A stretch of DNA of 64,000 nucleotides from positions 1 through 64,000 of the IMG/VR virus record IMGVR_UViG_3300035670_000008; one strand, written 5' to 3'. Position 1 is the stretch's first letter, and each line of letters opens with the position of its first letter. Positions 890 to 56,193 of the stretch are shown here, piece after piece. The notes below the pieces were generated by a model. That model was not told the origin of the DNA and ran no database searches. It worked only from the letters and a program-made list of their open reading frames with translations. A program made the translations under genes and the position numbers.

Positions 890-921
890 AAATAAACGTC
901 CGGAATTCCGGACGTTTATTT
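890..921. repeat. perfect 32-bp palindrome
   Basis: AAATAAACGTCCGGAA|TTCCGGACGTTTATTT, no loop, intergenic. Confidence 0.95.
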
Positions 922-3808: not shown

Positions 3809-4013
3809 TATTGTCGATGGTCTTGAAGAAGATGTAGACAGCGCCGCTGGGCATAGTAACGTACATTAAGTCTTCCTGCACGGCGGCAACTCGTCCTTCT
3901 GACCTGACAGTGCTGCTACCGCAGCCACGCCAGCCGTTAGAAGTGAGTTCCGCGCCGATGTAGTCTACCTCTACGGTGACTTTTTGGTGGAGTAGTTTAG
4001 CTTTGGCTTCCAT
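3744..4013 (-). CDS. hypothetical protein
   Basis: packed ORF. Confidence 0.5.
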   Translation of the reverse strand: MEAKAKLLHQKVTVEVDYIGAELTSNGWRGCGSSTVRSEGRVAAVQEDLMYVTMPSGAVYIFFKTIDNNGNEVWANNDIGDGAQVVFHG

Positions 4014-4821
4014 ATTGGTCTGGGGTAGTAGCGACAGGGGCAGTAATGGTTTCTTCGCCGTATAGCAGCACAGCTAGCGAGTAGAGCTTATCGATAACGC
4101 CGACCTCTTCAGCATAAGACAAGGCTGACTTACGTTGGTTCTTAGCCCGGGTGACTAGGTCAACGTGGTGGCGGTAGCGGTATTCCCGGTACAAGTCTCC
4201 CCACAGTTTTTGGTAGGACTCCCCGGTACGATACGCGTAGCTACGCAGCAGTTCGTTAAGGCTGGAGCGGATGGACTTTTCGGGTACCTCTTCCATAGCA
4301 GCAGGCAGCGCTAGGATTTCCTTATCCACCCGGTCGAAGCGGCCTTCAATCACCTTCAGGCGGGTGTCTTGTTCTAGCAACGCGCGGGCCTGTTCTTGTT
4401 GACGTTGCTCCACGGCGATGATGGCTTCGGCTTGTAGTCTTAACAGCTCGCCGGGGCTTAGAGGTTGTTGGGTGTAGCTTCCGGTCTTACGAATTGCGGG
4501 TAGTACTTCCGAAGTGACCCAGCGTTTAAATGCTTTGGCTTGCGGCTTGTGGCTGCCTAAAACAGCAGAGTAAAGACCGGACTCATTGATGATAGAGAGC
4601 CTGAAAGTATTGCTGCCAAAGGTTTGTCCCAAAATGGGAGAATCCATTCCGTTGGGGTTAATAGTTTGTTTGTCCTCTTCGTCAACATGCTCTAGCAGTT
4701 TTGCAGGGTTTGAATATTCTAGTACAGCGGCTACTTCTTTAGCCACGAACCAAGGTGTGTCGTCAATAGTGATGACGCTAATGGTTTGGGTGTTGAAATC
4801 GAAAGTATTCAGGTTGCTCAT
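3997..4821 (-). CDS. Bro-N domain (antirepressor-like) DNA-binding protein, Bro-1
   Basis: PWFVAKEVAAVLEY...INESGLYSAVLGSHKPQAKAFKRWVTSEVLPAIRKTGSY. Confidence 0.92.
   Translation of the reverse strand: MSNLNTFDFNTQTISVITIDDTPWFVAKEVAAVLEYSNPAKLLEHVDEEDKQTINPNGMDSPILGQTFGSNTFRLSIINESGLYSAVLGSHKPQAKAFKRWVTSEVLPAIRKTGSYTQQPLSPGELLRLQAEAIIAVEQRQQEQARALLEQDTRLKVIEGRFDRVDKEILALPAAMEEVPEKSIRSSLNELLRSYAYRTGESYQKLWGDLYREYRYRHHVDLVTRAKNQRKSALSYAEEVGVIDKLYSLAVLLYGEETITAPVATTPDQYGSQS
4620..4646. repeat. in-frame quasi-palindrome in Bro-1 (encodes DSPILGQT)
   Basis: aggtttgtccc-aaaat-gggagaatcca, 8 of 11 arm positions pair. Confidence 0.6.
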
Positions 4822-4859
4822 AGTTAGGGTAAAATCCTTAGAAAATTAGGGTGAATAAA

Positions 4860-5054
4860 ATGGCAGACCTTTATGAAAAGACCTACCACGCTGCGTTGGA
4901 TTGGGCGAAGCGGCACTACCCCAACGCGAGTAAATACCACGTGGCTGCGTTTGGAGACTCCGTGGTCTACTTGGTGACCGGAGCCTCAACTTCTTTAGGG
5001 GGAGGGCCTTCGATAAGAGAAGTACTTTCTTTCTTATGGCAGGAGGTAGTTTAA
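4860..5054 (+). pseudogene. 5' half of a gene interrupted by the paralogue+HNH insertion
   Basis: MADLYEKTYHAALDW...GGGPSIRE aligns with the N-terminus of the 5058..5507 product. Confidence 0.75.
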
Positions 5055-5057
5055 GTT

Positions 5058-5507
5058 ATGGACATCATTAAGATGTATCACCGCGCTCATAAATGGGGAT
5101 TAAATCATCACAGCGCGGCTCATCCTCAACACCACCGCTCCTTTGCTGCAGCAGTAGCTCAGCTATGCTGTGACGACCCAAAGGAGCCACTGAACAAAAG
5201 GGAGACGCTACTCCTAGAACTTTTACAGATTAGCGGCGGTCCGACGTGCCGTGAAGGTGCAGCAATATGGGCAGCCTATGGTAAAGGCGACTCGGTTAAG
5301 TCTAAGCATGAAGGTATGACTATCTTTTATGTAGACCCTAAGGTTAAGCGTCCAGGTACCTGGACGTTCGACGAAGCAGTTGAGCATTGTGAGCCTTACT
5401 GCTACGGCGAGCTAACTAAGTTGCACCTCGAAGTTTCCAGAACTGACCCGTGCTTTGATGACCCGCCGGAAGATTTGTTATCCTTGAAGAAACTATTATC
5501 TTCTTAA
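5058..5507 (+). CDS. hypothetical protein, full-length paralogue of the interrupted gene
   Basis: N-half matches 4860..5021 and C-half matches 6142..6396. Confidence 0.8.
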   Translation: MDIIKMYHRAHKWGLNHHSAAHPQHHRSFAAAVAQLCCDDPKEPLNKRETLLLELLQISGGPTCREGAAIWAAYGKGDSVKSKHEGMTIFYVDPKVKRPGTWTFDEAVEHCEPYCYGELTKLHLEVSRTDPCFDDPPEDLLSLKKLLSS

Positions 5508-5509
5508 GG

Positions 5510-6136
5510 ATGTCTAGAAAAGACTTAACGGGACAAAGGTTTGGGCAACTTATAGCGCTGGAGCCCGCAGAAAAACTTAAAGGAAAAAGCACTTGGCTTT
5601 GTCAGTGTGACTGTGGTGAGATGACTATCGTCCAGACTAAGCGTTTAACTACTGGACATACAAAGTCGTGTGGTTGTCTTCAAAGAACCATAACTTTGAA
5701 GCATGGCTTAGCTAGGTCGAAGACCTACCAGGCATGGCGCAATATGAAGTGTCGTTGTTTGTTGAAAACCAGAAAAAGGTGGAAGGACTACGGAGGTCGG
5801 GGAATAACTGTAGACCCAAGTTGGATGGACTTTGAAAACTTCTTAAGAGACATGGGCGAAGCTCCTCCAGGTATGTCCCTTGAGCGTGTCGATAACGATG
5901 GCAACTACTGTAAAGAGAATTGTATATGGGCAAGCTGGGAAGACCAGTATCGTAATCGTAGGACGAGTATTCTTATAACTTTGGAAGGGGAAACCAAAAC
6001 TATATCGGAGTGGTGTAGGCACTACGGCATCAACAGAAGCGTTTACGTGTCTCGAACTAAAAGAGGGTGGAGCATAGAAGCTGCTTTGACTACTCCGGTG
6101 GATAGTCGTTTTCATCCGAAGAAATATTGTGGCTAG
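5510..6136 (+). CDS. HNH-family homing endonuclease
   Basis: DLTGQRFG..WLCQCDCG..KSCGC..YGGRGI..SLERVDNDGNYCKENC.W. Confidence 0.9.
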   Translation: MSRKDLTGQRFGQLIALEPAEKLKGKSTWLCQCDCGEMTIVQTKRLTTGHTKSCGCLQRTITLKHGLARSKTYQAWRNMKCRCLLKTRKRWKDYGGRGITVDPSWMDFENFLRDMGEAPPGMSLERVDNDGNYCKENCIWASWEDQYRNRRTSILITLEGETKTISEWCRHYGINRSVYVSRTKRGWSIEAALTTPVDSRFHPKKYCG

Positions 6137-6141
6137 TAAAC

Positions 6142-6396
6142 GACTTAGTTAGCTGGAGTCTGATGGGGCCTAAGGGTCAGTGGAGTAAAGTCCAAACCGA
6201 CAAGGGGGAGCTGACTGCTCTATTCCCAGATGGGTCGATGACCCCTGCAGGGGAGTGGGAGTTCGATGCTGCCTGCGGTCACGCAGCGGTCATCTGCTTT
6301 GGGGAGCTACCTCCAATAGCAAAGGTCATCTCTCAACAGGAATTCTGCTTTGACGATGACCCTGCAGATATGGATGCGCTAGCGGAGATGGATTAG
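6142..6396 (+). pseudogene. 3' half of the interrupted gene (may be translated from TTG 6127)
   Basis: GEWEFDAACGHAAVICFGEL...CFDDDPAD vs GTWTFDEAVEHCEPYCYGEL...CFDDPPED. Confidence 0.75.
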
Positions 6397-6638
6397 AGTA
6401 CGCTTAACTGTACGTCGTCGATTTGAATAAGTTCTATTTGGGTGGGCTCCCCGTCGGTGCCGTAGTGGACAATCACGCCGGGGGCTACTTCTTCGCTTTC
6501 GACGACTTCGCTGTAGCCAATGCTAAAGGTTGCGGCCTTGTCATTAATATTGACCCGTAGGGTACGTAGGATAGCTTTGGTGCGGGGGTCAATTGGGTTC
6601 GGGGTTGTTGACTTGTAGTCTTGTGGTGATGTTGTCAT
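6393..6638 (-). CDS. DUF2283 domain protein
   Basis: VVESEEVAPGVIVHYGTDGEPTQIEL. Confidence 0.7.
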   Translation of the reverse strand: MTTSPQDYKSTTPNPIDPRTKAILRTLRVNINDKAATFSIGYSEVVESEEVAPGVIVHYGTDGEPTQIELIQIDDVQLSVL

Positions 6639-6650
6639 GTTTGCATGTGC

Positions 6651-6947
6651 TCAAGTTCGCACGTCTAGTAATACGTTTTCAATCTTGTAGCGGCGGACGT
6701 GAAAGCCCTGCTTAGGCAGCTCTTCTACCAGTTTGTACATCCGCTCCAGCAGCGTTTCGTAGTCCTTGTGCCGTCCGGTGATGAAGGAGTCCAGGTTGCT
6801 GGGGATTCCCTTCTGCATAAAGAGCTTAGCTAACCGGAAGTCCTGCGTAGCTATGGTCTGTTTCAATTGGTCTACTTCGGTGGAGTCCAGAACTGGGTCT
6901 ATGGTAATGTGACACTCGAAGTAGTACTCAGTAGTTGGGTTACTCAT
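6651..6947 (-). CDS. hypothetical protein
   Basis: FECHITI...VRRYKIE phage hypothetical pattern. Confidence 0.6.
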   Translation of the reverse strand: MSNPTTEYYFECHITIDPVLDSTEVDQLKQTIATQDFRLAKLFMQKGIPSNLDSFITGRHKDYETLLERMYKLVEELPKQGFHVRRYKIENVLLDVRT

Positions 6948-7255
6948 GCTGTTAGCCAGAATATATCGTCTTCTTCTTCAATCCACTCTGAACCGTCGTA
7001 TTCGCGGATAACGAATCGCTTCCCTATTGATACCCATTCGACCTCTAACGAGTCAGTTCCTCTTAAGTTACTGTACTCGCTGTAGTGTTGTTTACAGTAG
7101 GTATTGATTTCTTCTACTGTAGCGTCGTTGAGAACTAGGGTCGCTAAAGTTGGGTCGAATACTAACCTATCATCACCGTGTCGGGTATACCAACCAACTA
7201 TAGACATAGGAGTATACAACACGGCTACTTTTCCATCTTTGACTAATTTATTCAC
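6944..7255 (-). CDS. conserved phage hypothetical protein
   Basis: KDGKVAVLY..GW.T...LEVEWV..G..F.I.EYDGSE pattern. Confidence 0.7.
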   Translation of the reverse strand: MNKLVKDGKVAVLYTPMSIVGWYTRHGDDRLVFDPTLATLVLNDATVEEINTYCKQHYSEYSNLRGTDSLEVEWVSIGKRFVIREYDGSEWIEEEDDIFWLTA

Positions 7256-7263
7256 TTTGGCTC

Positions 7264-7560
7264 CTAGTAAAAATGTTGTTCGTCGTAATCATCTTCGTAG
7301 GTAACACCATTGAACTCCGCAAGGTCGGGCAGTGCGGGTTTTAGTGCTGCTGCAATAGCGTCATGCAGCTTGGACAGGACTTCTTTCTGTGGGAAGGCTA
7401 CATAGTTCTCGGTGTAGTAGCCGGGGTCTTCGGGAGACTTACTAAGGTCTACTTTCTCCAACCACAGAACTTCTTCAAATCCTTCGTCTTCGTCAAGCCC
7501 GTCGATACGGTAGAAGTGGGTTGGGTATTCCGTTTCGCGAATGATGATTTCAATACTCAT
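7264..7560 (-). CDS. hypothetical protein
   Basis: packed ORF. Confidence 0.55.
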   Translation of the reverse strand: MSIEIIIRETEYPTHFYRIDGLDEDEGFEEVLWLEKVDLSKSPEDPGYYTENYVAFPQKEVLSKLHDAIAAALKPALPDLAEFNGVTYEDDYDEQHFY

Positions 7561-7570
7561 TGTCTATTAC

Positions 7571-8104
7571 CTAAAAGAAGGCTACCCAAGATGCATGGCT
7601 GACATTGCCGGCGTCAATTTGTTTTCTTCCGGGCAGTGTTACGGTGGTGACGCCGCTTACTAGATACACCAGTCCATTGATGTCATCGTAGGAGCTGCCG
7701 TTGGAGTTGCTGTCATGGTAGTAAAGCTCTAGGTTTAGCTTGGTCTTGTAGTAGAAGTCTTTGCAGACTCTTTCCCACGCAGCTACGAGTTCTTTTATTT
7801 TCTCTTTGATTAACTTGTCCAACTTATCATCGGTGAGTTGTTCGTCATCAAGATCACCTACTAGCGCTTCTGCTAGGCTCTCTTCGTCGCCATATTCAAG
7901 CGCGATATAAAGAGTTTCTTCATCGTGATTCGCTAGGTATTTCTGTATGGTATCCCAGCCGTCTAACTGTAGGGACTCCAGCCACTTAGCCTCTGCTACC
8001 CAGCCGGAGCTGGCTCCGTATCCCATTCCCATTAATCTTCCTCCATTACTAAGCTTAATCGAATGTCGTCGGCTCCGTGGAGCTCGTCTGCTTTGACTGA
8101 CCAC
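7571..8104 (-). CDS. hypothetical protein (start likely MGMGY near 8032)
   Basis: packed ORF. Confidence 0.6.
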   Translation of the reverse strand: MVSQSRRAPRSRRHSIKLSNGGRLMGMGYGASSGWVAEAKWLESLQLDGWDTIQKYLANHDEETLYIALEYGDEESLAEALVGDLDDEQLTDDKLDKLIKEKIKELVAAWERVCKDFYYKTKLNLELYYHDSNSNGSSYDDINGLVYLVSGVTTVTLPGRKQIDAGNVSHASWVAFF

Positions 8105-8316
8105 TCCTTCATCCCGTTGGGGGACTGGTGGAGATAGAAGGTGAAGCGGCGGGGGTCTTCTCCGTGTTCTTCGACAGTAACTTTACCGTTACTGAAGTCA
8201 ACTACGCGGGCGGGGATGGAAAAGATGCTTTCGTAGCCACCGCTGACGTAATCCCAGTCGGCGTAGATTAGGTGAACGGTGGCATGTAGATTATTCAAGT
8301 TGACTGTAGTTACCAT
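8032..8316 (-). CDS. hypothetical protein
   Basis: packed ORF. Confidence 0.55.
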   Translation of the reverse strand: MVTTVNLNNLHATVHLIYADWDYVSGGYESIFSIPARVVDFSNGKVTVEEHGEDPRRFTFYLHQSPNGMKEWSVKADELHGADDIRLSLVMEED

Positions 8317-8319
8317 GGT

Positions 8320-8679
8320 TTAAAAGTCTTGTAAAGGTTCTTCTTCTGCTTGCTCTTTGCTTTTTTCTGTCGCTTCGCCGCAAAGGAAGTCTAATACTCC
8401 GTCTGAGAAGCCCACTTTAGTTAGCTGGAAGTATTGTTCTAAGAGCCTCCTCATAGAGGCTTTATCCTTTTCTTCTAACGGGTCAGTTAGAACATTAATG
8501 ATTTCTTCTGAGCCTACCTGCGCTACGGCAGCTTCAATCTCTTCTTTGCTATGGCCTAAGGCTTTGATAAGACACATCAGCTGGGCGCTCAGCACCATAT
8601 TCAGCAGCGCATCTTCGTAATAAGCAGTCTCCACCTGTTTCTGGCGGTGGCTAGCAGCGGTTAGGGTTTGTTTCTTCAC
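8320..8679 (-). CDS. hypothetical protein
   Basis: packed ORF. Confidence 0.55.
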   Translation of the reverse strand: MKKQTLTAASHRQKQVETAYYEDALLNMVLSAQLMCLIKALGHSKEEIEAAVAQVGSEEIINVLTDPLEEKDKASMRRLLEQYFQLTKVGFSDGVLDFLCGEATEKSKEQAEEEPLQDF

Positions 8680-8834
8680 TGTGAGTTTGACTCCTTTAAT
8701 AACCGAATGATTTCATCTAGCTTGTCCGCGCAAGCATCTACGTCGCTACGCAGCCGTCCAAGTTCTTCATGGATGTCTTGGTGGTGGAAGCGTAGCGGCA
8801 CCTGCAGGAGCTTTTTAAGTAGCTTCTTCTTCAT
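8676..8834 (-). CDS. small hypothetical protein (52 aa)
   Basis: MKKKLLKKLLQVPLRFHHQ...; GTGA overlap with the next gene; below ORF-track cutoff. Confidence 0.5.
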   Translation of the reverse strand: MKKKLLKKLLQVPLRFHHQDIHEELGRLRSDVDACADKLDEIIRLLKESNSQ

Positions 8835-8870
8835 TGTTATACTGGGATTGTACTTTCATTGGTTTTTAAC

Positions 8871-9167
8871 ATGGGTCACAAGGTTAAAGTAAGTGCGGTT
8901 CCTCTTGAAGGCTCGGAGATTGCCCAAGGGTTTGATGTTCATTTGTTTGTGGATGACCAGCCGTTTGAAGCTACAAAGCTGACGATTGTAGCTGAAGCAG
9001 GCCGAGCAGTGGTGAAAGCTATTGTAGAGTTTGGGATTAGCGAACTTGAGTTTGACGGCTACCCGGAGACTGCTTTCTTAGCGTTGGGCAGCGAGTCTAA
9101 GTTGACTGCTGAGGAGTATAAGAAAGCTGTGGAAGACCTCCGCCGAGCTGCTTTGGGTTTAGAGTAG
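8871..9167 (+). CDS. hypothetical protein
   Basis: isolated plus-strand ORF from ATG 8871 that fills a gap. Confidence 0.6.
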   Translation: MGHKVKVSAVPLEGSEIAQGFDVHLFVDDQPFEATKLTIVAEAGRAVVKAIVEFGISELEFDGYPETAFLALGSESKLTAEEYKKAVEDLRRAALGLE

Positions 9168-9204
9168 AGCAACTTGAAGTTTTTGCGCATTGCGGCTTCT
9201 CTAT

Positions 9205-9564
9205 CTATTCCCATCGTTTCTGTCTCCATACATCTGTAATCGTTTGCTGGTGGTACCACTCCCAGATTGGTCGGCTGAAGTAGTAATTCCAGTCCAACTC
9301 AAAGCAGTAGCGGTCGTTCCGAATGGTTAGTGCTAAGTAAGATGGGTAGTCCAACCAACTATCAGACCAGCTGACCTTAAAGCAGACCCAACCAATCCAT
9401 AGCTGCGTCCAGGTGTAGCCATTGATAAAGGTCAGAGGGCCTAACTTCAAGGCGATACGGCCATCGCTACTTACTTTTAGAACGTTTTTAGCTTTACCCA
9501 TTGCCGTACTCCCGGGCGCTGCCTTCGCAGTAATCCCATTCGTCTTTATACCCGTCATGCCCAA
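9205..9564 (-). CDS. Trp-rich hypothetical protein
   Basis: ORF. Confidence 0.45.
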   Translation of the reverse strand: MGMTGIKTNGITAKAAPGSTAMGKAKNVLKVSSDGRIALKLGPLTFINGYTWTQLWIGWVCFKVSWSDSWLDYPSYLALTIRNDRYCFELDWNYYFSRPIWEWYHQQTITDVWRQKRWE

Positions 9565-9817
9565 AGTTTTTGGGCTCTGGTCTGTACCGAGCTACCACGT
9601 ATTCCCCAGACTCCGTCCTGAATAGGACTTCGTTTTCAGTGCGGCTGCCGCGGGCATACTCTTCTAAGTCTGCTTCTGCCAGTAGGGTGACGACGTTGTA
9701 AGCAGTCTTTCCTAAGAATTCCCCCCGCAGTAACCAGCTGTAGGGTTTGGAGGAGCCGGGCAGCCCATTGGGGAAGTGGATAAGTTGTTTACCGTTGGCT
9801 AAGTTAATCGTTTCCAT
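9494..9817 (-). CDS. hypothetical protein
   Basis: packed ORF. Confidence 0.55.
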   Translation of the reverse strand: METINLANGKQLIHFPNGLPGSSKPYSWLLRGEFLGKTAYNVVTLLAEADLEEYARGSRTENEVLFRTESGEYVVARYRPEPKNFGHDGYKDEWDYCEGSAREYGNG

Positions 9818-10268
9818 GTTCGTGTTCCTCCAGTTTCTGTAGTAGGTCTTTTACGTTACCTAAGGCTGCCCAAATCTCTTCGTCGCTGTACTTTAGGTGT
9901 ATAACAATTTGAAGGTCACCGTCATCATAGACCTTTAGTGCGGAGCTGCCAATTCGGTACTCTGGCTCGAAGTTCGTTAAAGGCGGGAGTTGATCTTCTT
10001 TCTCTTTGTAGTCTGCATCTTCATCTATGGCCAGTAGCTCCCAACTGACTCCGTATAAGTCTTCGGCCTTGAAGTACTGGACTTCTTTTAAGAACTTGCT
10101 GACTCTTAAGGCTTTTTCTAATGTTGCCCTGGGTAAGTCACACTCAATGTAATCGGGGGTAGAACCCCACTCGATGTTGCTGTAGGTGACGGCTGTAACG
10201 ACGACAGTGTTAATTTTGAATTTGTAGAATTGTTCCATAACTTTACATTTCAACAATTGAAGCGTCAC
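9804..10268 (-). CDS. hypothetical protein
   Basis: packed ORF. Confidence 0.55.
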   Translation of the reverse strand: MTLQLLKCKVMEQFYKFKINTVVVTAVTYSNIEWGSTPDYIECDLPRATLEKALRVSKFLKEVQYFKAEDLYGVSWELLAIDEDADYKEKEDQLPPLTNFEPEYRIGSSALKVYDDGDLQIVIHLKYSDEEIWAALGNVKDLLQKLEEHEHGND

Positions 10269-10977
10269 TGTAGATAATCAAGGCGATGGCATAGAGCTTG
10301 TCAATCACCCCAACCTCTTCAGCGTATTCGCAGACGGTCTTGCCTTGGTTCTTGGCGCGGGCTACCAAATCAACGTGGTGCCGGTAGCGGTACTCTTTAT
10401 ACAGATTTCGCCATAGGTTTTGATAAGACTCGCCGGTGCGGTAAGCGTAGCCACGGATAACTTCGTTTAAGCAGGAGCGAATGGATTTTTCAGGAACTTC
10501 TTCCGTAGCCGGGGGTAACTGTTTGAGTTCTTCATCGACCTTGGCAAAGCGCTGCTCGATGATGGCTAACTTCATGCTGTGTTCGGTCAACCGCTTTTCG
10601 TGGTCTACCAATACCTGTGCTGACTGAAGCACTACTTCTGCTGTTGACAGTGGTTGAATTTGGTAGCTTCCAGTTTTACGGATGGAAGGCAGCACCTCTT
10701 GTACTACCCAGTCTTGAAAAGGCCCAGCTTGGGGTTTGCGTGAAGTAAGGACAAGTCGGTAAAGCCCAGACTCTGAAATGTAGACGGTGTCAGGGTTATC
10801 GACACCCTCGGTATTACCGATGGTCTTTTCGTAATCTTTTAGGCGGCTGTAGGCGTCACTATAATTCTTGATTTCCAGTACACGACAAACGTCTGCTCCT
10901 AGAAACCAAGGCTCGCCGTCAATAGTGATAACGCGTACTTCTTGGGTGTTGAATTGGAAAGTTGTTAGATTTGTCAT
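10243..10977 (-). CDS. Bro-N domain protein Bro-2, paralogue of Bro-1
   Basis: GEPWFLGADVCRVLEI..ISESGLYRLVLTSRKPQA..FQDWV..EVLPSIRKTGSY; C-terminal domain closely matches Bro-1. Confidence 0.92.
   Translation of the reverse strand: MTNLTTFQFNTQEVRVITIDGEPWFLGADVCRVLEIKNYSDAYSRLKDYEKTIGNTEGVDNPDTVYISESGLYRLVLTSRKPQAGPFQDWVVQEVLPSIRKTGSYQIQPLSTAEVVLQSAQVLVDHEKRLTEHSMKLAIIEQRFAKVDEELKQLPPATEEVPEKSIRSCLNEVIRGYAYRTGESYQNLWRNLYKEYRYRHHVDLVARAKNQGKTVCEYAEEVGVIDKLYAIALIIYSDASIVEM
10801..10827. repeat. in-frame 27-bp quasi-palindrome in Bro-2 (encodes KTIGNTEGV)
   Basis: gacaccctcgg-tatta-ccgatggtctt. Confidence 0.8.
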
Positions 10978-11005
10978 AGGATTCCTTAGAAAGGTTTAAT
11001 GGTTC

Positions 11006-11611
11006 TTACGCATAAATTTTTTCAATCAATTGGTTGATTACAGCGCCAATACAGAAACCTTTTTCTTGGGGCTCATACCGAATCCAAGAGCAGCCAAGAA
11101 TACTCGTAATACAATCCTGACGCTCAATGTCTTTTTTGGTTCGATAGCTATGATACGGCTCATCGCACTCAACGGCGATACGGTGCTGAGGGAAGTAAAG
11201 GTCAATTCGATAGCCTGAAACGAAAAACTGTTCAATTGGGTTTAAGTGTTGAAAAGCAGACTTAATAATTCGGAGTGTGTCGGCTTCAATAGAAGAACGA
11301 TGTATGTTTAGGTTTATACCTAGCTGCTCTGCTACCAAACGAGCCTTTGGTTTTCGTGACTTTTGTAGTAATTGTTTTACGCCCGGTTCCCAAATCACAG
11401 TTATAAGTTGGGGTCCACCAAGGGTCTCCACTAACTGGAGACCCTTCCACTCTTCATCAATACTTCGTGCTAGCCGCGATCCATCGCTCTCTGCTTCTAG
11501 TACAGTGGCTAAGTCAGTAGCTACCACACCAAAATCAAATGTGCCCTCTGGGTGTTTAACGAATCGAACTTCTTGTTGGTCAAAGTGTTGAGCGATTAAT
11601 TCAATTGTCAT
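11006..11611 (-). CDS. Bro-N-like domain fused to a DUF559/Vsr-like PD-(D/E)XK endonuclease, Bro-3
   Basis: VVATDLATVL..KGLQLVETLGGPQ..VIWEPG..SRKPKA, then YRIDLYFPQHRIAVECDE..H..D.ER..WIRY. Confidence 0.85.
   Translation of the reverse strand: MTIELIAQHFDQQEVRFVKHPEGTFDFGVVATDLATVLEAESDGSRLARSIDEEWKGLQLVETLGGPQLITVIWEPGVKQLLQKSRKPKARLVAEQLGINLNIHRSSIEADTLRIIKSAFQHLNPIEQFFVSGYRIDLYFPQHRIAVECDEPYHSYRTKKDIERQDCITSILGCSWIRYEPQEKGFCIGAVINQLIEKIYA
11420..11446. repeat. in-frame 27-bp palindrome with perfect 11-bp arms in Bro-3 (encodes KGLQLVETL)
   Basis: aagggtctcca-ctaac-tggagaccctt. Confidence 0.95.
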
Positions 11612-11650
11612 TGAATACCTCCGAAAGGTTTAATGGTTTTCTTCTCTTCA

Positions 11651-11677
11651 AAGGGTGTCCACATTATGGACGTCCTT
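11651..11677. promoter_or_regulatory. intergenic 27-bp quasi-palindrome, putative operator of the Bro-3/Bro-2 unit
   Basis: aagggtgtcca-catta-tggacgtcctt; 19/27 identical to 11420..11446. Confidence 0.65.
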
Positions 11678-11686
11678 AGCTAGTTT

Positions 11687-11706
11687 GCTTTCTTTTTGCT
11701 TTTTTC
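11687..11706 (-). promoter_or_regulatory. conserved 20-bp upstream motif GAAAAAAGC-N5-GAAAGC
   Basis: identical to 32738..32757; one mismatch to 34898..34917. Confidence 0.6.
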
Positions 11707-11720
11707 AGTCGCTTCAATAG

Positions 11721-11748
11721 AAAAAGCTGCCCACCGAAGCGGGCAGCT
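11721..11748 (-). terminator. intrinsic terminator
   Basis: AGCTGCCCGC-TTCG-GTGGGCAGCT followed by a T-run on the minus strand. Confidence 0.8.
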
Positions 11749-11801
11749 ACCATACATACACAATTACCCACCGATATGAGGCCTCGGACGCGGGCCAGCG
11801 A

Positions 11802-12407
11802 TTAGGCTAAGTGCAGCTTGCGAGTCAACCACTTATACGCGGCGAATAGTCGGTAGCCAACTCGGAACTTCGCCGTTTCAGCTTCTATAAGCATGGTTGT
11901 AGCTAACTTCTGCTTGAAGATATCTGTGTACCGATAGACCTTGATGGGGTCTTTGCCACTGTCGTGGGCTGTGGCAGCTTCAGCAAAGGTATCAAACTTC
12001 TGCCGGTGCGTAGCTACACCGTAGATTAACTCCAGCGCGTTGTAGATTCCATAGTCAACTGCGAAGTGTGGTTTTTCACCAGGCCAGTTGAGCCCTTCGT
12101 AGCCCCGCTGCCACAACGGACGGACGCCCAGCTTCTTATTGGTCAACGAAGCCAGCACCCAGTCGAGCAGCACGATATTGGTGTCGGGCCAGTAGTAGCA
12201 GGTGCCTCCGTAGACTTCTGAGTACCACCAGAACCACCGCCCGATCCATAGTTTCTGTAACCACTGTGGCATCCCACCTACGATGTCGGGGTCGTAGATT
12301 AGGGGGCTGACGCTGGCATAAAGGTCGTCTTCAATCTTAACGATGTAGCCTGGGTACTCTGGTTCAATCTTCCCGCAGCACACGACGATTTCTGCTTTAG
12401 TTTCCAT
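11802..12407 (-). CDS. hypothetical protein
   Basis: packed ORF. Confidence 0.6.
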   Translation of the reverse strand: METKAEIVVCCGKIEPEYPGYIVKIEDDLYASVSPLIYDPDIVGGMPQWLQKLWIGRWFWWYSEVYGGTCYYWPDTNIVLLDWVLASLTNKKLGVRPLWQRGYEGLNWPGEKPHFAVDYGIYNALELIYGVATHRQKFDTFAEAATAHDSGKDPIKVYRYTDIFKQKLATTMLIEAETAKFRVGYRLFAAYKWLTRKLHLA

Positions 12408-12816
12408 CTTTTGTTTCCTCCTGGATGCTTTTCTTGCTGTAGCTGCGCAGGCGCTGCTTCAGGGATTTATCCCAGTCGCCTATCTGCTGTTGCTTGTTGT
12501 TGATGATTCTGTTCAGGTGACGTTCGATTGGCTTAGCAACGTTCTCAAAGAACCACTGGCGCATGACCTCAGCAGGTAACAAAGGCGACTTAGCTAATAA
12601 ATCTACTGTCACTGGCTGCAGCCGGATAAAGACTTCTTCATCCAGCTGTAGGTACAGCACGCCGGGATAGACATTGGTAAAGGCAATCTTGCCGCAGACT
12701 TTTTCGTAATCGGCTCCTAAGGCTTCTCTATATTGTTCAAGAAACCTTTTTAGGTATAGCTCCGCTACCTCGGTGAGTTGGCGCTGCTCGATTTCATAAT
12801 CAAATATATCTAGCAT
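12397..12816 (-). CDS. hypothetical protein
   Basis: packed ORF. Confidence 0.6.
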   Translation of the reverse strand: MLDIFDYEIEQRQLTEVAELYLKRFLEQYREALGADYEKVCGKIAFTNVYPGVLYLQLDEEVFIRLQPVTVDLLAKSPLLPAEVMRQWFFENVAKPIERHLNRIINNKQQQIGDWDKSLKQRLRSYSKKSIQEETKDGN

Positions 12817-13145
12817 CAGCTTGCTTTCTGTGATTGGTTTTCATAGACGTAGCGGGCGGCGTACTTGATTTCCAACGCGCCCAAGAAGGGATAGTCGTCC
12901 AACAACGTGCCGAAGCTTTCACCTCGAAGGAGTAGACTGCCAATATGGTGGACGGTAACGCGCGTGTTAGGGAATGTTACCGCCCCGCCCATTACGTCTG
13001 GGTCGGAGCTAAGTGTATCTAACCAGCTGTAGTAGCTCAATCTTTCCGTTCCTTTAGGTATTGTATTTGTTCTAACCATTGCCTTAGCAGTTCTTCTTTC
13101 CACTCCAGGTCGTTTATCCTGTCTTCTAGACTGTCGATGTGGCAT
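12816..13145 (-). CDS. DUF433 domain (antitoxin-like) protein; start likely MVRTN near 13079
   Basis: DPDVMGGAVTFPNTRVTV..I...L..GES...LLDDYPFL. Confidence 0.85.
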   Translation of the reverse strand: MPHRQSRRQDKRPGVERRTAKAMVRTNTIPKGTERLSYYSWLDTLSSDPDVMGGAVTFPNTRVTVHHIGSLLLRGESFGTLLDDYPFLGALEIKYAARYVYENQSQKAS

Positions 13146-13228
13146 ATCAGCTTGAGTAGCACTGCGCCTACGAGTATGACCAGATACAGAAAGATGATGG
13201 TTAGTCTTACTTCAACGGTCATTGCCAC
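13037..13228 (-). CDS. small membrane protein
   Basis: hydrophobic helix followed by coiled coil. Confidence 0.5.
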   Translation of the reverse strand: MAMTVEVRLTIIFLYLVILVGAVLLKLICHIDSLEDRINDLEWKEELLRQWLEQIQYLKERKD

Positions 13229-13491
13229 CCGCCAAATCTATCTTCTAGGTAGCTTACTAGCCGACGGATAAAGTCTTCGTCGAATTGCTTTGTCCAACTG
13301 AATTCGTTGGCTTTAGCAGTTAGGTCATAAGCAGTGATGGAGCTGTTAATCTCTTGTTGTTCCTCTTCGGTGACGTTGCAGCATTCAATATACTTATCCA
13401 CCTTGACGGATAGAATAATCACCAAGTACAGCAGCGAGTAGAGTTCTTCTTCTAGTTCTTCGGTAGTGGTTTTGTCTAGAGCAATAATCAT
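13219..13491 (-). CDS. hypothetical protein
   Basis: packed ORF. Confidence 0.5.
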   Translation of the reverse strand: MIIALDKTTTEELEEELYSLLYLVIILSVKVDKYIECCNVTEEEQQEINSSITAYDLTAKANEFSWTKQFDEDFIRRLVSYLEDRFGGWQ

Positions 13492-13493
13492 AG

Positions 13494-13883
13494 TTAATAA
13501 AGCTGGACAGTCTTCCAGTTGATAGCTTCCATTTCTTCAAATATATCGCGTAGCTGCCGCGCCCATTCTTCTTTAGTGATGTCCCGGCAGGCACCATCGA
13601 ACCAGTCCATAAACCAGTATTCAATCTTACCGTTAGGGAAGAAGCGGATTTGGTCGCTAGGGCCGCCGTAGCTCAGCATATAACTGTAGTAGCCGCACTC
13701 TTGCCATTCAAAGGTTCCAGGTTCGATATACTCAAAGTCCAAACCGTATTCGTGAAAGGGCGGCAGATTGTGTTCCTGGCTCCCTTCCGTTAAGACATCG
13801 ATGTCGTTTAGATACAACTCGATGTCAGCTTTTACTTTGGCTAGTTCATCGTCAATTCTCTGCTCGCAAGTTCGTTCTGACAT
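13494..13883 (-). CDS. conserved phage hypothetical protein
   Basis: EYGLDFEY..GYY.Y.LSYGGPSDQIRFF..YWFMDWFDGA. Confidence 0.7.
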   Translation of the reverse strand: MSERTCEQRIDDELAKVKADIELYLNDIDVLTEGSQEHNLPPFHEYGLDFEYIEPGTFEWQECGYYSYMLSYGGPSDQIRFFPNGKIEYWFMDWFDGACRDITKEEWARQLRDIFEEMEAINWKTVQLY

Positions 13884-14455
13884 AATTCATCTTCGATGCG
13901 GGTGCGTAGTTTTACTTTCTTCTGTAGGGCTAGCCGGACGATATCGTCTAGCTTAGATACGACCTTACCGGTGGCGTCCACACCTACGTCCACCGCTCGG
14001 TATTCATCTAGGGGACTTCTACGTCCATGAAGGTGCCCGAAAAGATGGACTGAGCCATCCATCATGCCATACCAATCTAGGATAGGGTAGTGCATCATGA
14101 CCAGCCGGGTGGGCGGCAGGCCTTCTTTCTTGTAAGTGAACGTATGGTAGTCCACGATATTAACGAAGCAGGCTTTGAACTTGCCCCTGTCTCTAAAGCT
14201 TCGGTCATGGTTGCCAGCCACTAGAAACTTACTGCCGTTGAGGGCGTTCAGGATTTCTACCGTCCTTGGTAGGTTATAGAAGGAAACGTCCCCTAGGATA
14301 TAAACGAAGTCTTCCGGCTGGACGGTAGAGTTCCACTCGGCAATCATACCTACCGTCATACCATCAACGGTGAGGTACTTGCCTCGGGTGTGGGCACAGT
14401 AGTTAAGGATGCTCCGCTGCCCAAAGTGGAGGTCGGAGGTGATGTAGGTTTGCAT
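13841..14455 (-). CDS. calcineurin-like metallophosphoesterase
   Basis: TSDLHFG, LGD, GNHD, HYP and GHLH motifs. Confidence 0.9.
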   Translation of the reverse strand: MQTYITSDLHFGQRSILNYCAHTRGKYLTVDGMTVGMIAEWNSTVQPEDFVYILGDVSFYNLPRTVEILNALNGSKFLVAGNHDRSFRDRGKFKACFVNIVDYHTFTYKKEGLPPTRLVMMHYPILDWYGMMDGSVHLFGHLHGRRSPLDEYRAVDVGVDATGKVVSKLDDIVRLALQKKVKLRTRIEDELCQNELASRELTMN

Positions 14456-14458
14456 AAC

Positions 14459-15196
14459 TTAGCGGAAGTAAGAGTGAATAACTTCGTCTAGCTGCTCATT
14501 AACAGCGTAATGCTTAACATCATACTTGCCAATTCTCTCTTTGAATGCTGGCTCCAAGTAACGAGACACGTATCGTCCTAAAGCACTTCCAGTCCCTATC
14601 CTTTCTACACTGTAACCAAGTTCCTTAGCCCGTACTTTTACAATGGTGTACTCGATCTTCTGCCCACCTAATAGCTTTTGATTTCGCATCAACTCTAGGT
14701 CGTCAGTTAAGGCATCCTCCAACAGAAGTTTAAGGTGCGGTTTAACTTGTAAGGTTGGGATTACGGCGGCGGCATTAATGTAGTCGATTATATCCCGCTG
14801 GGGCAATGCAGGTGGTTGTGCGTCTTCCGGCTTTGTCTTCAGTTTGTTTAGAATCTGCTCTAAACCAAAGGCACCAAAGGTACGCATTAAGGCTTTCGCA
14901 CCAGGGGCTTTGGCTTTTGACTCGTAGGCAAAGTATTCGAGCACTAAGATTGCAGCTACTGGAGTGAAGCCGTTTTCGGATAAGTCTGCGGCTTCAAACC
15001 CATGCTGTACAAGCCTTTCAGCTAATTTTTGTGAGCTAAAGTCTGCACCTCGAATGATAGACATATCATTCACATCAGCCATACGAGCTACGCCACGAAT
15101 GGATAAGTTTCCATTCGGCATAGCTTCATTAGAGATTAGACTGAACAACGCGGCGGGGGTATTAATTAAGCCGAAGCTAGGTAATGAATTAGTCAT
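14459..15196 (-). CDS. antirepressor/KilA-like putative DNA-binding protein
   Basis: LSIRGVARMADV...ILVLEYFAYES..A..LMR.F pattern recalled from cyanobacterial and phage antirepressor-like proteins. Confidence 0.55.
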   Translation of the reverse strand: MTNSLPSFGLINTPAALFSLISNEAMPNGNLSIRGVARMADVNDMSIIRGADFSSQKLAERLVQHGFEAADLSENGFTPVAAILVLEYFAYESKAKAPGAKALMRTFGAFGLEQILNKLKTKPEDAQPPALPQRDIIDYINAAAVIPTLQVKPHLKLLLEDALTDDLELMRNQKLLGGQKIEYTIVKVRAKELGYSVERIGTGSALGRYVSRYLEPAFKERIGKYDVKHYAVNEQLDEVIHSYFR

Positions 15197-15219
15197 ACTG
15201 ATTTAGTTGATGGGTAAAC

Positions 15220-15247
15220 AAAAAAAAGCGGTGGTTAAGACCGCTTT
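15220..15247 (-). terminator. intrinsic terminator
   Basis: GCGGT-8nt-ACCGC followed by T8 on the minus strand. Confidence 0.7.
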
Positions 15248-15264
15248 ATACTAACGTTCGATAA

Positions 15265-15398
15265 ATGGGTGTAAGCATTACTTACATCCTTATTCTTCTT
15301 CTTCTCGGGTGCTTAGAGTTAACTTAAAGGGAACGTATATTACCCGTACCCTAGTTAAAGCTTTCTTACCTATGGGGACAAGCATTGTTTGTCCCCAT
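15265..15398. repeat. array of three 27-bp quasi-palindromes of the Bro-N in-frame type
   Basis: 15265 atgggtgtaag-catta-cttacatcctt; 15327 aagggaacgta-tatta-cccgtacccta; 15372 atggggacaag-cattg-tttgtccccat. Confidence 0.75.
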
Positions 15399-15419
15399 GT
15401 CGGTCGTTTATAGCTAGGT

Positions 15420-23565: not shown

Positions 23566-23594
23566 AAAAAGGATGACGAACCGTTCGTCATCCT
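23566..23594 (-). terminator. intrinsic terminator
   Basis: AGGATGACGAA-CGG-TTCGTCATCCT followed by TTTT. Confidence 0.8.
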
Positions 23595-23620
23595 CGACAG
23601 TAGTGGCTGTACTTTATCTA

Positions 23621-27306: not shown

Positions 27307-27673
27307 GTTCTTTTAATAAGCTAACTAGTTTGTCCAATAGTAACAGACGGTTAGTGATATAGTCGCAGGTCTTAGAATAAATGACCTCCGGGGGGTCAGC
27401 GGGCAGCTTACCTAAAGTAACTAGAATCCAGCAGTTGTGGTATAGCACAGTTGCTTTAAAGCTGGGCTCTAGTGTTATCTTAGGCAGCGCGTTACTATAC
27501 AGACTGTTAAAGACGGCGGATTGGAAGATGAAGGGGGTTAAATCGTAACTAGCCGGGCTTAAACAGACTTTCTTCTTATAGAAGTGGCAGTTGTGCTCGT
27601 CCAGCCAGATGATATCCCCTAACGTGCTGGACTGAGTCTCTTCTATACGTTCATATAATTGTTCTACTAGCAT
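27299..27673 (-). CDS. hypothetical protein
   Basis: packed ORF. Confidence 0.55.
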   Translation of the reverse strand: MLVEQLYERIEETQSSTLGDIIWLDEHNCHFYKKKVCLSPASYDLTPFIFQSAVFNSLYSNALPKITLEPSFKATVLYHNCWILVTLGKLPADPPEVIYSKTCDYITNRLLLLDKLVSLLKEHA

Positions 27674-56009: not shown

Positions 56010-56193
56010 CGATGGCCTCCAATAAAAGGCGTGGGTTTTCTCCTTGGATGGGGGAGCGTATAATCTGCTTAACCAAGTAGAGGCGACCTGTTTTATCTTT
56101 AACAGTCGCCCCTTCTTTTAAGACATGAATACGCCTCCCCCAGCTTAAGTGATGTGGGTACTTAAGCTGGTAGCGGGAAGGCTCTTTAGACAT
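56002..56193 (-). CDS. hypothetical protein
   Basis: packed ORF. Confidence 0.5.
   Translation of the reverse strand: MSKEPSRYQLKYPHHLSWGRRIHVLKEGATVKDKTGRLYLVKQIIRSPIQGENPRLLLEAIDG

What the first reader, a model, noticed from the sequence alone, without database searches (positions are those of the whole stretch)
4620..15398. Family of 27-bp co-varying palindromes that are both in-frame coding segments of Bro-N genes and free intergenic elements
Seen in sequence: all three Bro-N genes carry a quasi-palindrome at the homologous protein position, just before the I.ESG / W.EPG helix. Bro-3 at 11420 is aagggtctcca-ctaac-tggagaccctt (KGLQLVETL, perfect arms). Bro-2 at 10801 is gacaccctcgg-tatta-ccgatggtctt (KTIGNTEGV). 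Bro-1 at 4620 is weaker and offset by 1 nt (DSPILGQT). Four intergenic copies share the 11-5-11 geometry GGG-N6-(C/T)ATT(A/G)-N6-(T/C)CC at 11651, 15265, 15327 and 15372. Read on the minus strand in the same register they give KDVHNVDTL, KDVSNAYTH, *GTGNIRSL and MGTNNACPH, which look like alternative Bro-N segments. Inner arm sequence differs between copies (tcca/tgga, taag/ctta, tcgg/ccga, caag/tttg) while symmetry is kept. Inference: either (a) Bro proteins bind a dyad that is also embedded in their own gene, so site and protein segment co-evolve through template-switch mutagenesis, or (b) the intergenic copies are donor cassettes that diversify this segment by gene conversion, with no reverse transcriptase needed. 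I am not aware of a description of either, but could not search the literature.
Basis: partly seen in the sequence, partly recalled or inferred. Interest (0 to 1): 0.85.

Follow-up and report, generated by a model that had tools for sequence, protein, structure and literature searches.

The report
Conserved palindrome inside Bro-N genes
A 27-base DNA palindrome sits in frame at one fixed spot of Bro-N ("antirepressor") genes in many unrelated phages, its two arms changing together so that the DNA symmetry dictates the amino acids, and this phage also carries four free copies just upstream of two Bro-family genes; its function is unknown and I found no description of it.

Summary
Bro-3 (11006-11611, minus strand) holds a perfect 11-5-11 palindrome at 11420-11446.

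At the same codons, 15 homologues are palindromic with different, compensating inner arms. They have 117 Watson-Crick pairs against 74±4.6 in synonymous-codon controls.

An unbiased scan of 85 non-redundant Bro-N genes found this site as the only outlier among 325 positions. Allowing small register shifts, 75% of 71 unrelated Bro-N genes have at least 8 of 11 pairs, against 3.5-9% in controls. Named phages with the palindrome include PAJU2, TL-2011b, phiP27, BK5-T and Henu2.

A covariance model built only from other contigs' in-gene palindromes picks out exactly five sites in the 64-kb window: the Bro-3 site and the intergenic copies at 11651, 15265, 15327 and 15372. Bro-2 (8/11) fits a flipped class. 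Bro-1 is unproven.

The intergenic copies lie upstream of Bro-3 and of a fourth Bro-like gene (14459-15196). None was found near about 95 other Bro-N genes checked.

My best reading is a selected cis-acting hairpin or palindrome that evolves by arm-to-arm templated change. A neutral template-switch "attractor" with relic copies is the main rival.

The parts
11420..11446 (-). In-frame perfect 27-bp palindrome (11-5-11) in Bro-3, codons 56-64 (KGLQLVETL). In the model these codons form the first strand of the beta-hairpin 56-63/66-74.
   Evidence: 23.6 bits; codon-control P 0.00025
11006..11611 (-). Bro-3 gene: a Bro-N domain fused to a Vsr / I-Bth0305I-like (DUF559) nuclease domain.
11651..11677 (.). 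Intergenic copy 40-66 nt upstream of the Bro-3 start codon. It is 25/27 identical to the in-gene palindrome of the unrelated contig L107.
   Evidence: (26.5 bits, E 1.3e-5)
11635..11681 (.). 47-nt indel that carries the 11651 copy. It is absent from the otherwise roughly 90% identical leader of the syntenic relative L037. Which lineage gained or lost it is unknown.
15265..15291 (.). Intergenic copy of the V..Y type, and the best model hit in the window.
   Evidence: 28.4 bits, E 3e-6; 23/27 to L062
15327..15353 (.). Weaker intergenic copy of the T..R type, with 7/11 pairs.
   Evidence: (20.1 bits, E 1.5e-3)
15372..15398 (.). Intergenic copy of the T..C type. The second outer pair is T-A where the gene family has A-T, which looks like a compensated change.
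   Evidence: 24.1 bits; 23/27 to L030, 22/27 to L044
14459..15196 (-). Fourth Bro-like gene with no Pfam hit. Its C-terminal 155 aa are homologous to the C-terminal part of the Bro-N protein P0021. The three copies at 15265-15398 and a terminator lie in its leader.
10801..10827 (-). Bro-2 quasi-palindrome (KTIGNTEGV, 8/11 pairs). It lies at the same alignment column and belongs to the class with the outer pair flipped (T..G instead of G..T).
   Evidence: (z 2.4)
4620..4646 (-). Bro-1 candidate (8/11 pairs, out of frame by 1 nt, inside a lineage-specific insertion). Membership is not established.
   Evidence: no hit; P 0.09
11725..11748 (-). Intrinsic-terminator-like hairpin with a T run, upstream of the 11651 copy on the coding strand.
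15225..15247 (-). Intrinsic-terminator-like hairpin with a T run, between the three copies and the start of gene 14459-15196.

Best explanation
The 27-bp elements are copies of one conserved nucleic-acid palindrome that is an intrinsic feature of Bro-N genes. It occupies the codons for the first strand of the domain's beta-hairpin, where the residues are free to vary.

I think it is kept self-complementary at the nucleotide level by selection for a hairpin or cruciform. Arm-to-arm templated (template-switch) changes are probably how it drifts in sequence without losing symmetry. As a result the DNA symmetry, not protein chemistry, sets the amino-acid pairs: V with D/Y/H, T with C/S/R/G, L with E/Q, R with P/T.

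I infer that it acts in cis on the Bro genes themselves, as a structure in the DNA or the mRNA that limits or times expression of these antirepressor-type genes. In this phage, four extra copies sit in the leaders of Bro-3 and of the Bro-like gene 14459-15196, which has no in-gene copy.

- **Shown:** the palindrome, its family-wide position, the covariation, the codon bias, the membership of the intergenic copies, and the 47-nt indel.
- **Inferred:** selection rather than mutation bias alone, the cis-regulatory role, and which molecule and strand folds.
For: - **Cyanophage-type clade (15 genes).** 75% of cells are paired against 62.5±1.9 in shuffles (0/500) and 31-50% in slid controls. There are 117 Watson-Crick pairs against 74±4.6 under synonymous resampling (0/5000). 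The inner pairs score 59/90 against 33±4 when arms are swapped among genes.
- **Unbiased scan.** Over 325 positions of 85 genes, this is the single outlier (mean z 1.66; background 0.05±0.19). It holds without the clade (z 1.47).
- **71 unrelated genes.** 399/781 pairs against 251±13 (arms swapped) and 279±10 (synonymous). With register shifts, 75% have at least 8/11 pairs against 9.2% and 3.5% in controls.
- **Different outer stems and registers.** Staphylococcus, Streptococcus, Lactococcus and phiP27 phages carry a palindrome at the same gene position. Conserved K-G/T-L codons are therefore not the cause.
- **Composition.** Stem GC stays at about 0.5-0.58 while gene GC ranges from 0.37 to 0.63, and the centre is AT-rich.
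- **Intergenic copies.** They score 20-28 bits with a model trained elsewhere. All lie within about 200 nt upstream of two Bro-family genes.
- **Literature.** Template switching is reported to create and maintain hairpins with compensatory changes and loop inversions (PMC8794818, title and abstract as listed; I did not read the full text).
Against: - No functional data exist, and no Rfam family matches.
- Symmetry runs into the 5-nt 'loop' (66/142 pairs against 44-46±5). A folded RNA hairpin does not need that, so it points to duplex DNA symmetry or to a mutational origin.
- There is no excess of sense-strand G-U over A-C mismatches inside the stems.
- The intergenic copies pair better on the plus strand, which is antisense to the local genes.
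- About a quarter of Bro-N genes lack the palindrome.
- No extragenic copies turned up near other Bro-N genes or in 70 kb of PAJU2 and Ab105-2phi. The leader copies are therefore not a general part of any regulatory scheme.
Confidence: 0.45

Rival explanations
1. The palindrome is a neutral, self-perpetuating quasi-palindrome. Once present in a protein segment that tolerates almost any residue, every new mismatch is quickly copied to, or erased from, the other arm by template switching during replication. Symmetry then persists with no function. The intergenic copies would be relics of lost or replaced Bro-N modules that outlive their genes because they keep re-symmetrising.
For: - Symmetry extends into the loop, which suits a DNA-level copying process.
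- L056 and L058 are 87% identical in the flanks. One whole arm differs between them, and complementarity goes from 4 to 9 of 11.
- The inner residues are variable (2.3-3.3 bits) between invariant flanks.
- The 15372 copy is of the T..C type, as in P0021, whose C-terminal domain is homologous to the gene just downstream.
- The 15265 copy keeps a GAAGAAT stretch like the codons that precede the palindrome in L044 and L027.
- There is no extragenic copy in other phages.
- The mechanism is documented (PMC8794818; quasi-palindrome hotspots in E. coli, from my own knowledge).
Against: - The palindrome persists at one gene position through complete turnover of sequence, register and outer stems across phages of Gram-negative, Gram-positive and cyanobacterial hosts.
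- No other position of the domain shows anything similar.
- Three relics of three different types within 134 nt, with no other coding remnant, would need repeated precise erosion.
Confidence: 0.3
2. Self-embedded operator. Bro-N proteins would bind, as dimers or in a structure-specific way, to the palindrome inside their own gene and to the leader copies, so regulating themselves. The lambda O protein, which binds ori iterons lying inside gene O, is a precedent (my own knowledge).
For: - Bro-N is regarded as a DNA-binding domain (Pfam family description, from my own knowledge).
- The element is a full duplex palindrome with an AT-rich centre.
- The 11651 copy differs from the Bro-3 palindrome at only 1 of 11 positions in its left arm, and its centre lies 231 bp (22 helical turns) from it.
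Against: - If the variable inner bases were read by the residues they encode, each mutation would have to change site and reader compatibly, and no mechanism for that is known.
- If they are not read, their complementarity goes unexplained.
- Three of the four intergenic copies have inner arms unlike any resident Bro-N gene.
- No structure of a Bro-N/DNA complex is available.
Confidence: 0.1
3. Donor cassettes. The intergenic copies would be silent alternative versions of the segment, copied into a Bro-N gene by microhomology-mediated template switching at the shared outer stems. That would diversify the beta-hairpin strand without a reverse transcriptase.
For: - Each intergenic copy is 19-25/27 identical to an allele used by some other phage's Bro-N gene.
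- Three different types lie in tandem.
- Between the window and L037, the segment's differences cluster in the loop, with 5 of 6 nt changed against roughly 10% in the flanks.
Against: - Only 5-6 nt of homology bound donor and target.
- Bro-3's allele (L..E type, loop GTTAG) matches no cassette.
- There are no cassettes near other Bro-N genes.
- In mosaic pairs the divergence is not confined to the 27 nt.
- No variant of Bro-3 is on record (its cluster has a single member).
Confidence: 0.08
4. Chance, or a by-product of amino-acid and codon usage. On this view the palindromes simply reflect conserved K-G and T-L codons, which happen to be reverse complements.
For: - AAGGGT and ACCCTT are reverse complements and encode the conserved K-G and T-L.
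- The synonymous-control expectation at this site (about 4 pairs) is above the random 2.75.
- Bro-1 and Bro-2 taken alone are at chance level.
Against: - Synonymous resampling is exceeded by 9-12 standard deviations.
- The inner arms co-vary.
- Palindromes with quite different outer stems occupy the same site in other phages.
- The intergenic copies have no coding constraint.
Confidence: 0.01

Closest known systems
Template-switch (quasi-palindrome) mutagenesis that creates and maintains hairpins (PMC8794818; Ripley/Lovett quasi-palindrome hotspots, from my own knowledge)
   Same: Perfect or near-perfect stems, compensatory changes on both arms, clustered multi-nucleotide changes in one arm, and loops that occur in both orientations.
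   Different: It was described mainly for RNA genes and non-coding DNA. Here the palindrome lies in frame at one fixed codon position of a protein-domain family, so each templated change rewrites amino acids. Detached copies also exist.
Binding sites or origins embedded in the gene of the protein that uses them (lambda ori iterons inside gene O; phiX174 and P2 origins inside gene A; my own knowledge)
   Same: A dyad-symmetric element lies inside a phage gene, in a protein segment that tolerates it, and its specificity differs between related phages.
   Different: No binding or replication role is known for Bro-N. There is a single 27-bp palindrome rather than iterons. The inner arms vary freely while pairing is kept.
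Rickettsia palindromic elements (RPE), which insert in frame into protein genes and also occur between genes (my own knowledge)
   Same: The same palindromic element is found both as an in-frame coding segment and as a free intergenic element.
   Different: RPEs are 100-150 bp mobile insertions that add a new peptide at many unrelated sites. Here the segment is 27 bp, has native length, sits at one homologous position of one domain, and is not dispersed.
Small dispersed palindromic repeats: REP/REPIN and the 21-27-nt cyanobacterial SDRs (Elhai et al. 2008, cited in PMC3116915; that paper is not held and was not read)
   Same: Size (about 27 nt), hairpin potential, intergenic location, and appearance as a small indel relative to an orthologous sequence.
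   Different: These elements are not repeated elsewhere in the 216-kb contig, in IMG/VR or in 185,579 genomes, for the two sequence types searched. There are only four copies, all next to Bro-family genes. No RAYT-type transposase gene was noticed, and none was searched for.
Silent-cassette gene conversion (pilS/pilE, vls) and diversity-generating retroelements
   Same: A short variable protein segment with several non-expressed look-alike copies nearby.
   Different: There is no flanking homology beyond 5-6 nt, no evidence of transfer, and no adenine-specific pattern. No search for a reverse transcriptase was made.
Baculovirus hr palindromes near bro genes, and PeSL stem-loops that flank shuffled genes in T4-type phages (my own knowledge; one search lists only baculovirus genome papers)
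   Same: Imperfect palindromes or stem-loops associated with a gene family known for shuffling.
   Different: Those repeats are intergenic, with enhancer, origin or promoter roles. None is reported inside the Bro-N coding sequence.

Membership tests
Bro-N domain genes (Pfam PF02498) | HMM match above the gathering score | tested here: met
   Bro-1 scores 83.6 bits, Bro-2 83.2 bits and Bro-3 26.3 bits, against a cut-off of 25.6. PHROG antirepressor families also match. Gene 14459-15196 has no Pfam hit and is Bro-like only through its C-terminal domain.
Bro-N internal palindrome (family defined here; covariance model R1 built from 13 in-gene sites of other contigs) | Significant score with a model that was not trained on the window | tested here: met
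15265 scores 28.4 bits, 11651 scores 26.5, 15372 scores 24.1, 11420 scores 23.6 and 15327 scores 20.1, with E from 3e-6 to 1.5e-3. The next hit scores 15.1 bits.
Bro-N internal palindrome (family defined here) | Located at the homologous codon column of the Bro-N domain, in frame | tested here: met
   This holds for Bro-3 and Bro-2 (same alignment column, offset 0). Bro-1 does not meet it: it lies 22 nt away and 1 nt out of frame. The feature does not apply to the intergenic copies.
Conserved secondary structure (covariation) | Pairs kept through changes on both sides, beyond shuffled and slid controls | tested here: met
   There are 24 double-sided cells against 8.8±2.2, and four pairs with 3-4 pair types each. 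The arm-swap controls agree. Caveat: the sequences are related, and no tree-aware test was run.
Intrinsic (Rho-independent) terminator | GC-rich hairpin directly followed by a T run on the transcribed strand | tested here: not met
   In the genes the palindrome is followed by GGNGGN codons. On the coding (minus) strand none of the intergenic copies has a T run. Only 15267-15289 scores on the plus strand. True terminator-like sites lie beside them, at 11725-11748 and 15225-15247.
Dispersed mini-repeats (REP/REPIN, SDR, MITE-like) | Many copies scattered through the genome or its host's genome | tested here: not met
   The window holds five sites only. The two sequence types searched have no further copy in the 216-kb contig, and the T..C type has none in IMG/VR. 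The other IMG/VR matches of the first pattern were not examined. The T..C type has one unrelated match in 185,579 genomes.
Silent-cassette gene conversion system | Donor copies share flanking homology with the expressed site, and recombinant variants exist | tested here: not met
   The flanks of the four copies do not resemble Bro-N flanks. No Bro-3 variant is on record. Population data were not available.
Diversity-generating retroelement | A reverse transcriptase gene with a template/variable repeat pair that differs at adenines | not tested
   No search for a reverse transcriptase was made. The differences between copies are not confined to adenines.
Known RNA families (Rfam 15) and tRNA | Match at the gathering score, or an ARAGORN call | tested here: not met
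   No Rfam match and no tRNA in the whole window.
Template-switch mutation signature | Clustered substitutions in one arm that raise complementarity to the other arm between close relatives | tested here: inconclusive
   L056 and L058 differ at 9 of the 27 positions, 7 of them in one arm and none in the other, and pairs go from 4 to 9 at 87% flank identity. No ancestral reconstruction was done, and neighbouring codons also differ in some pairs.
Vsr / EDxHD (I-Bth0305I-type) homing endonucleases (Bro-3 C-terminal domain) | Fold and motif of the catalytic domain | tested here: inconclusive
   Pfam matches: PvuRts1I-like_N at 28.6 bits (cut-off 27) and DUF559 at 22.9 bits (cut-off 20.6). Foldseek matches: 3r3p with target TM-score 0.68 and Vsr 1cw0 with 0.46, but all E-values are above 0.001. 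Mobility was not tested.

The most novel reading that the evidence does not exclude
The palindrome is a functional element common to Bro-N genes of phages of many bacterial phyla. It would be a hairpin or cruciform (or the operator of the protein it helps to encode) that forces a protein segment to obey reverse-complement codon pairing. Detached copies such as the four in this phage would act either as extra cis sites or as microhomology-bounded templates that rewrite the DNA-facing strand of the Bro-N beta-hairpin. That would be a diversification or regulation device needing no reverse transcriptase or recombinase of its own.
Probability: 0.2. Interest if true: 0.9.

Novelty: new variant of a known kind. 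Interest (0 to 1): 0.8.

Why it matters
- Bro-N ("antirepressor", BRO) genes are among the commonest accessory genes of phages and prophages: more than 1000 of 50,697 GenBank phage records matched one query. What they do is mostly unknown.
- A nucleic-acid element conserved at one codon position through complete sequence turnover would be a new handle on how these genes are controlled or diversified.
- It would also be an unusually clear case of DNA symmetry overriding protein chemistry, with pairs such as V-D, T-C, L-E, R-P and M-H.
- If it turns out to be neutral, it would be a textbook natural example of a template-switch "attractor" inside a coding sequence.
- Pipelines that look for structured elements only between genes would miss it.

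Tried and rejected
- **tRNA or known RNA.** None was found.
- **Host-type dispersed repeat (SDR/REP).** Pattern scans of IMG/VR and of 185,579 genomes found no family. The one genome hit (L046) is not in a Bro-N gene. The Elhai 2008 SDR paper could not be read.
- **Decayed Bro-N genes.** Sensitive tblastn of seven Bro proteins found no coding remnant at 15197-15419 or 11612-11801. The gene at the syntenic spot in L037 is unrelated.
- **Polarity of the 47-nt indel.** L026 is too divergent to serve as an outgroup.
- **Recombination breakpoint at the palindrome.** Between the window and L037, identity falls about 40-80 nt downstream, at the GV.QLL/SRKPKA codons, not at the palindrome.
- **Exact 27-nt cassette replacement.** In mosaic gene pairs the neighbouring codons also differ.
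- **RNA versus DNA from wobble asymmetry.** Uninformative: 12 G-T (11 of them at the loop-closing pair) against 7 A-C.
- **Stem GC as evidence of selection.** Weak members share the same composition, so part of it comes from the amino acids.
- **Microevolution in E. coli genomes.** There was no match for the query tried.
- **Solved Bro-N/DNA complex.** None by sequence or fold.
- **Genome-collection search for Bro-3 relatives.** It found none.
- **A wider Bro-N alignment (A9).** It was too divergent for a locus search.

Full report
**Setting.** The window is the first 64 kb of IMGVR_UViG_3300035670_000008, a 216,563-bp contig with the same coordinates. No cultured phage resembles it at the DNA level.
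- Its genes include ribonucleotide reductase with an intein, a primase and helicases.
- Neighbours of homologues in related contigs (XisA/C-like recombinase, IS605 OrfB, EAL) suggest filamentous cyanobacteria as hosts. This is not established.
- Three minus-strand genes carry Bro-N domains: Bro-1 at 3997-4821, Bro-2 at 10243-10977 and Bro-3 at 11006-11611.
- Bro-3 is a Bro-N domain fused to a Vsr / I-Bth0305I-like nuclease domain.

**The observation.**
- 11420-11446 is a perfect 11-5-11 palindrome, in frame (KGLQLVETL).
- 11651, 15265 and 15372 have 9-10 Watson-Crick pairs plus G-T pairs. 15327 has 7.
- Bro-2 (10801) and Bro-1 (4620) have 8/11. The window holds 102 such sites against about 76 expected, and their codon-control P values are 0.19 and 0.09.
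- Long perfect hairpins as a class are enriched: 9 against 0.3.

**Homologues show covariation.**
- Bro-3's N-domain has relatives with various C-terminal domains.
- I fetched the DNA of 14 of them. At the same nine codons about 11 of the 15 genes are palindromic, but with different inner arms: CTCC/GGAG, GTGC/GCAC, ACAA/TTGT, GTAA/TTAC, GTCG/CGAC and AGTA/TACG.
- 75.2% of cells pair, against 62.5±1.9 in shuffles (0/500) and 31-50% when partners are slid. Double-sided changes number 24 against 8.8±2.2.
- Resampling synonymous codons gives 74±4.6 Watson-Crick pairs against 117 observed (0/5000). Swapping arms among genes gives 33±4 inner pairs against 59.
- The symmetry therefore belongs to the nucleotides, not to the peptide.

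**The feature is family-wide.**
- I fetched 80 further Bro-N genes from IMG/VR, using motifs far from this segment.
- I scanned all 325 window positions of the aligned domain in 85 non-redundant genes against synonymous controls. The only outlier is the column of Bro-3 K56, offset 0 (mean z 1.66; background 0.05±0.19). It remains the outlier without the Bro-3 clade (z 1.47).
- In 71 unrelated genes, 399/781 pairs form, against 251±13 with arms swapped and 279±10 with synonymous resampling. Pairing extends into the 'loop' (66/142 against 44-46±5), whose consensus YAWTR is itself self-complementary.
- With register shifts of ±9 nt, 75% of genes have at least 8/11 pairs, against 9.2% in synonymous controls and 3.5% at other positions of the same genes. 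For at least 10/11 the figures are 27%, 0.2% and 0%.
- Residues 3 and 7 of the segment pair as V-D/Y/H, I-D/Y, T-C/S/R/G, L-E/Q, R-P/T, A-R and M-H. These are exactly reverse-complement codons.
- A second class has the outer GGT/ACC pair flipped (T..G). It includes Bro-2.
- Among cultured phages, the best 11-5-11 site of the first 330 nt lies here in PAJU2 Ant gp25, TL-2011b, phiP27 L15, Staphylococcus Henu2, Streptococcus Javan330, Lactococcus BK5-T ORF38 and Ab105-2phi ORF77. Several of these have quite different outer stems. Mycobacterium phage BodEinwohner17 lacks it.
- In the AlphaFold model (pLDDT 89) the segment is the first strand of a beta-hairpin. Its five inner residues are variable between invariant flanks.

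**The intergenic copies.**
- Model R1, built from 13 in-gene sites of other contigs, was run over the whole window without filters. It returns five sites and then noise: 15265 (28.4 bits), 11651 (26.5), 15372 (24.1), 11420 (23.6) and 15327 (20.1). The next hit scores 15.1 bits.
- Each copy is 19-25/27 identical to the in-gene palindrome of some unrelated phage. That is as close as in-gene members are to one another.
- The 11651 copy lies in a 47-nt indel (11635-11681) relative to the otherwise roughly 90% identical leader of the syntenic relative L037. Which lineage gained or lost it is unknown.
- The three copies at 15265-15398 precede a terminator and gene 14459-15196. The C-terminal 155 aa of that gene are homologous to the Bro protein P0021 (E 4e-32).
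- No extragenic copy exists in 84 kb of related loci, in the ±400-nt flanks of 80 other Bro-N genes, or in 70 kb of PAJU2 and Ab105-2phi.
- The two sequence types searched are not dispersed repeats.

**Interpretation.** The element persists at one gene position through turnover of its sequence, register and outer stems. Nothing comparable occurs elsewhere in the domain. Together these make selection on a nucleic-acid structure or dyad the best reading, with templated arm-to-arm change as the way it evolves (PMC8794818; the L056/L058 example). I infer a cis role on Bro-gene expression. The leader copies would supply the same element to Bro-3 and to a Bro-like gene that lacks it.

Four things weaken this reading:
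- Symmetry runs through the centre.
- There is no wobble asymmetry.
- The intergenic copies pair better on the antisense strand.
- Leader copies are absent elsewhere.

These points favour the neutral 'attractor plus relics' rival, to which I give 0.3. The self-operator and donor-cassette models remain possible but unsupported. I found no paper linking Bro-N to an internal palindrome. That search covers open-access text only.

Noticed in passing
window 10243-11640; L037 7640-8753: The syntenic relative L037 has a single Bro gene (P0008). Its N-domain is 84% identical to Bro-3's, and its C-terminal part is about 71% identical to Bro-2. In the window the equivalent gene appears split by a nuclease domain plus a second Bro-N domain. 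An exact 16-mer (AACCATTAAACCTTTC) precedes both the Bro-3 and the Bro-2 start codons. This looks like insertion or loss of a homing-endonuclease-type module.
   Followed up: partly
window 11612-11664 (minus strand): The loop of the 11651 copy contains an ATG preceded by AAGGA at Shine-Dalgarno distance. It opens an 18-codon ORF whose TGA stop overlaps the Bro-3 ATG (ATGA). The relative L037, which lacks the 47-nt stretch, has no such upstream ORF.
   Followed up: no
window 14459-15196: This 245-aa protein has no Pfam or PHROG hit, yet its last 155 residues are 41% identical to the C-terminal part of the Bro-N protein P0021. It looks like a Bro-family gene with a replaced N-terminal domain.
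   Followed up: partly
window 19582-22425: The ribonucleotide reductase large subunit is interrupted by a LAGLIDADG/Hom_end domain (residues about 480-566), which is presumably an intein. The homologue in L038 is 731 aa and lacks it.
   Followed up: no
window 890-921: A perfect 32-bp palindrome (14-bp arms around AATT, with an EcoRI-like GAATTC at the centre) lies mostly in the gap between minus-strand ORFs 229-846 and 987-1316; its 3' end overlaps a 40-aa ORF (916-1038). It is unrelated in sequence to the Bro palindromes.
   Followed up: no
window 23569-23595; 56140-56170; 36902-36928; 27430-27455: Other long near-perfect hairpins occur in the window. One lies about 105 nt upstream of the RNR small-subunit gene. 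None scores significantly with model R1: only 23569-23595 appears, at 11 bits, E about 1.
   Followed up: no
window 11433 and 11664: The centres of the Bro-3 in-gene palindrome and of the leader copy are 231 bp apart, about 22 helical turns. This could be coincidence.
   Followed up: no
L039-L041 (JGI contigs): The closest nuclease-fused homologue of Bro-3 (P0002, 68% identity) sits in what look like cyanobacterial chromosomal contigs, next to EAL and IS605 OrfB/TnpB genes. There the palindrome is degraded, with 4/11 pairs.
   Followed up: no
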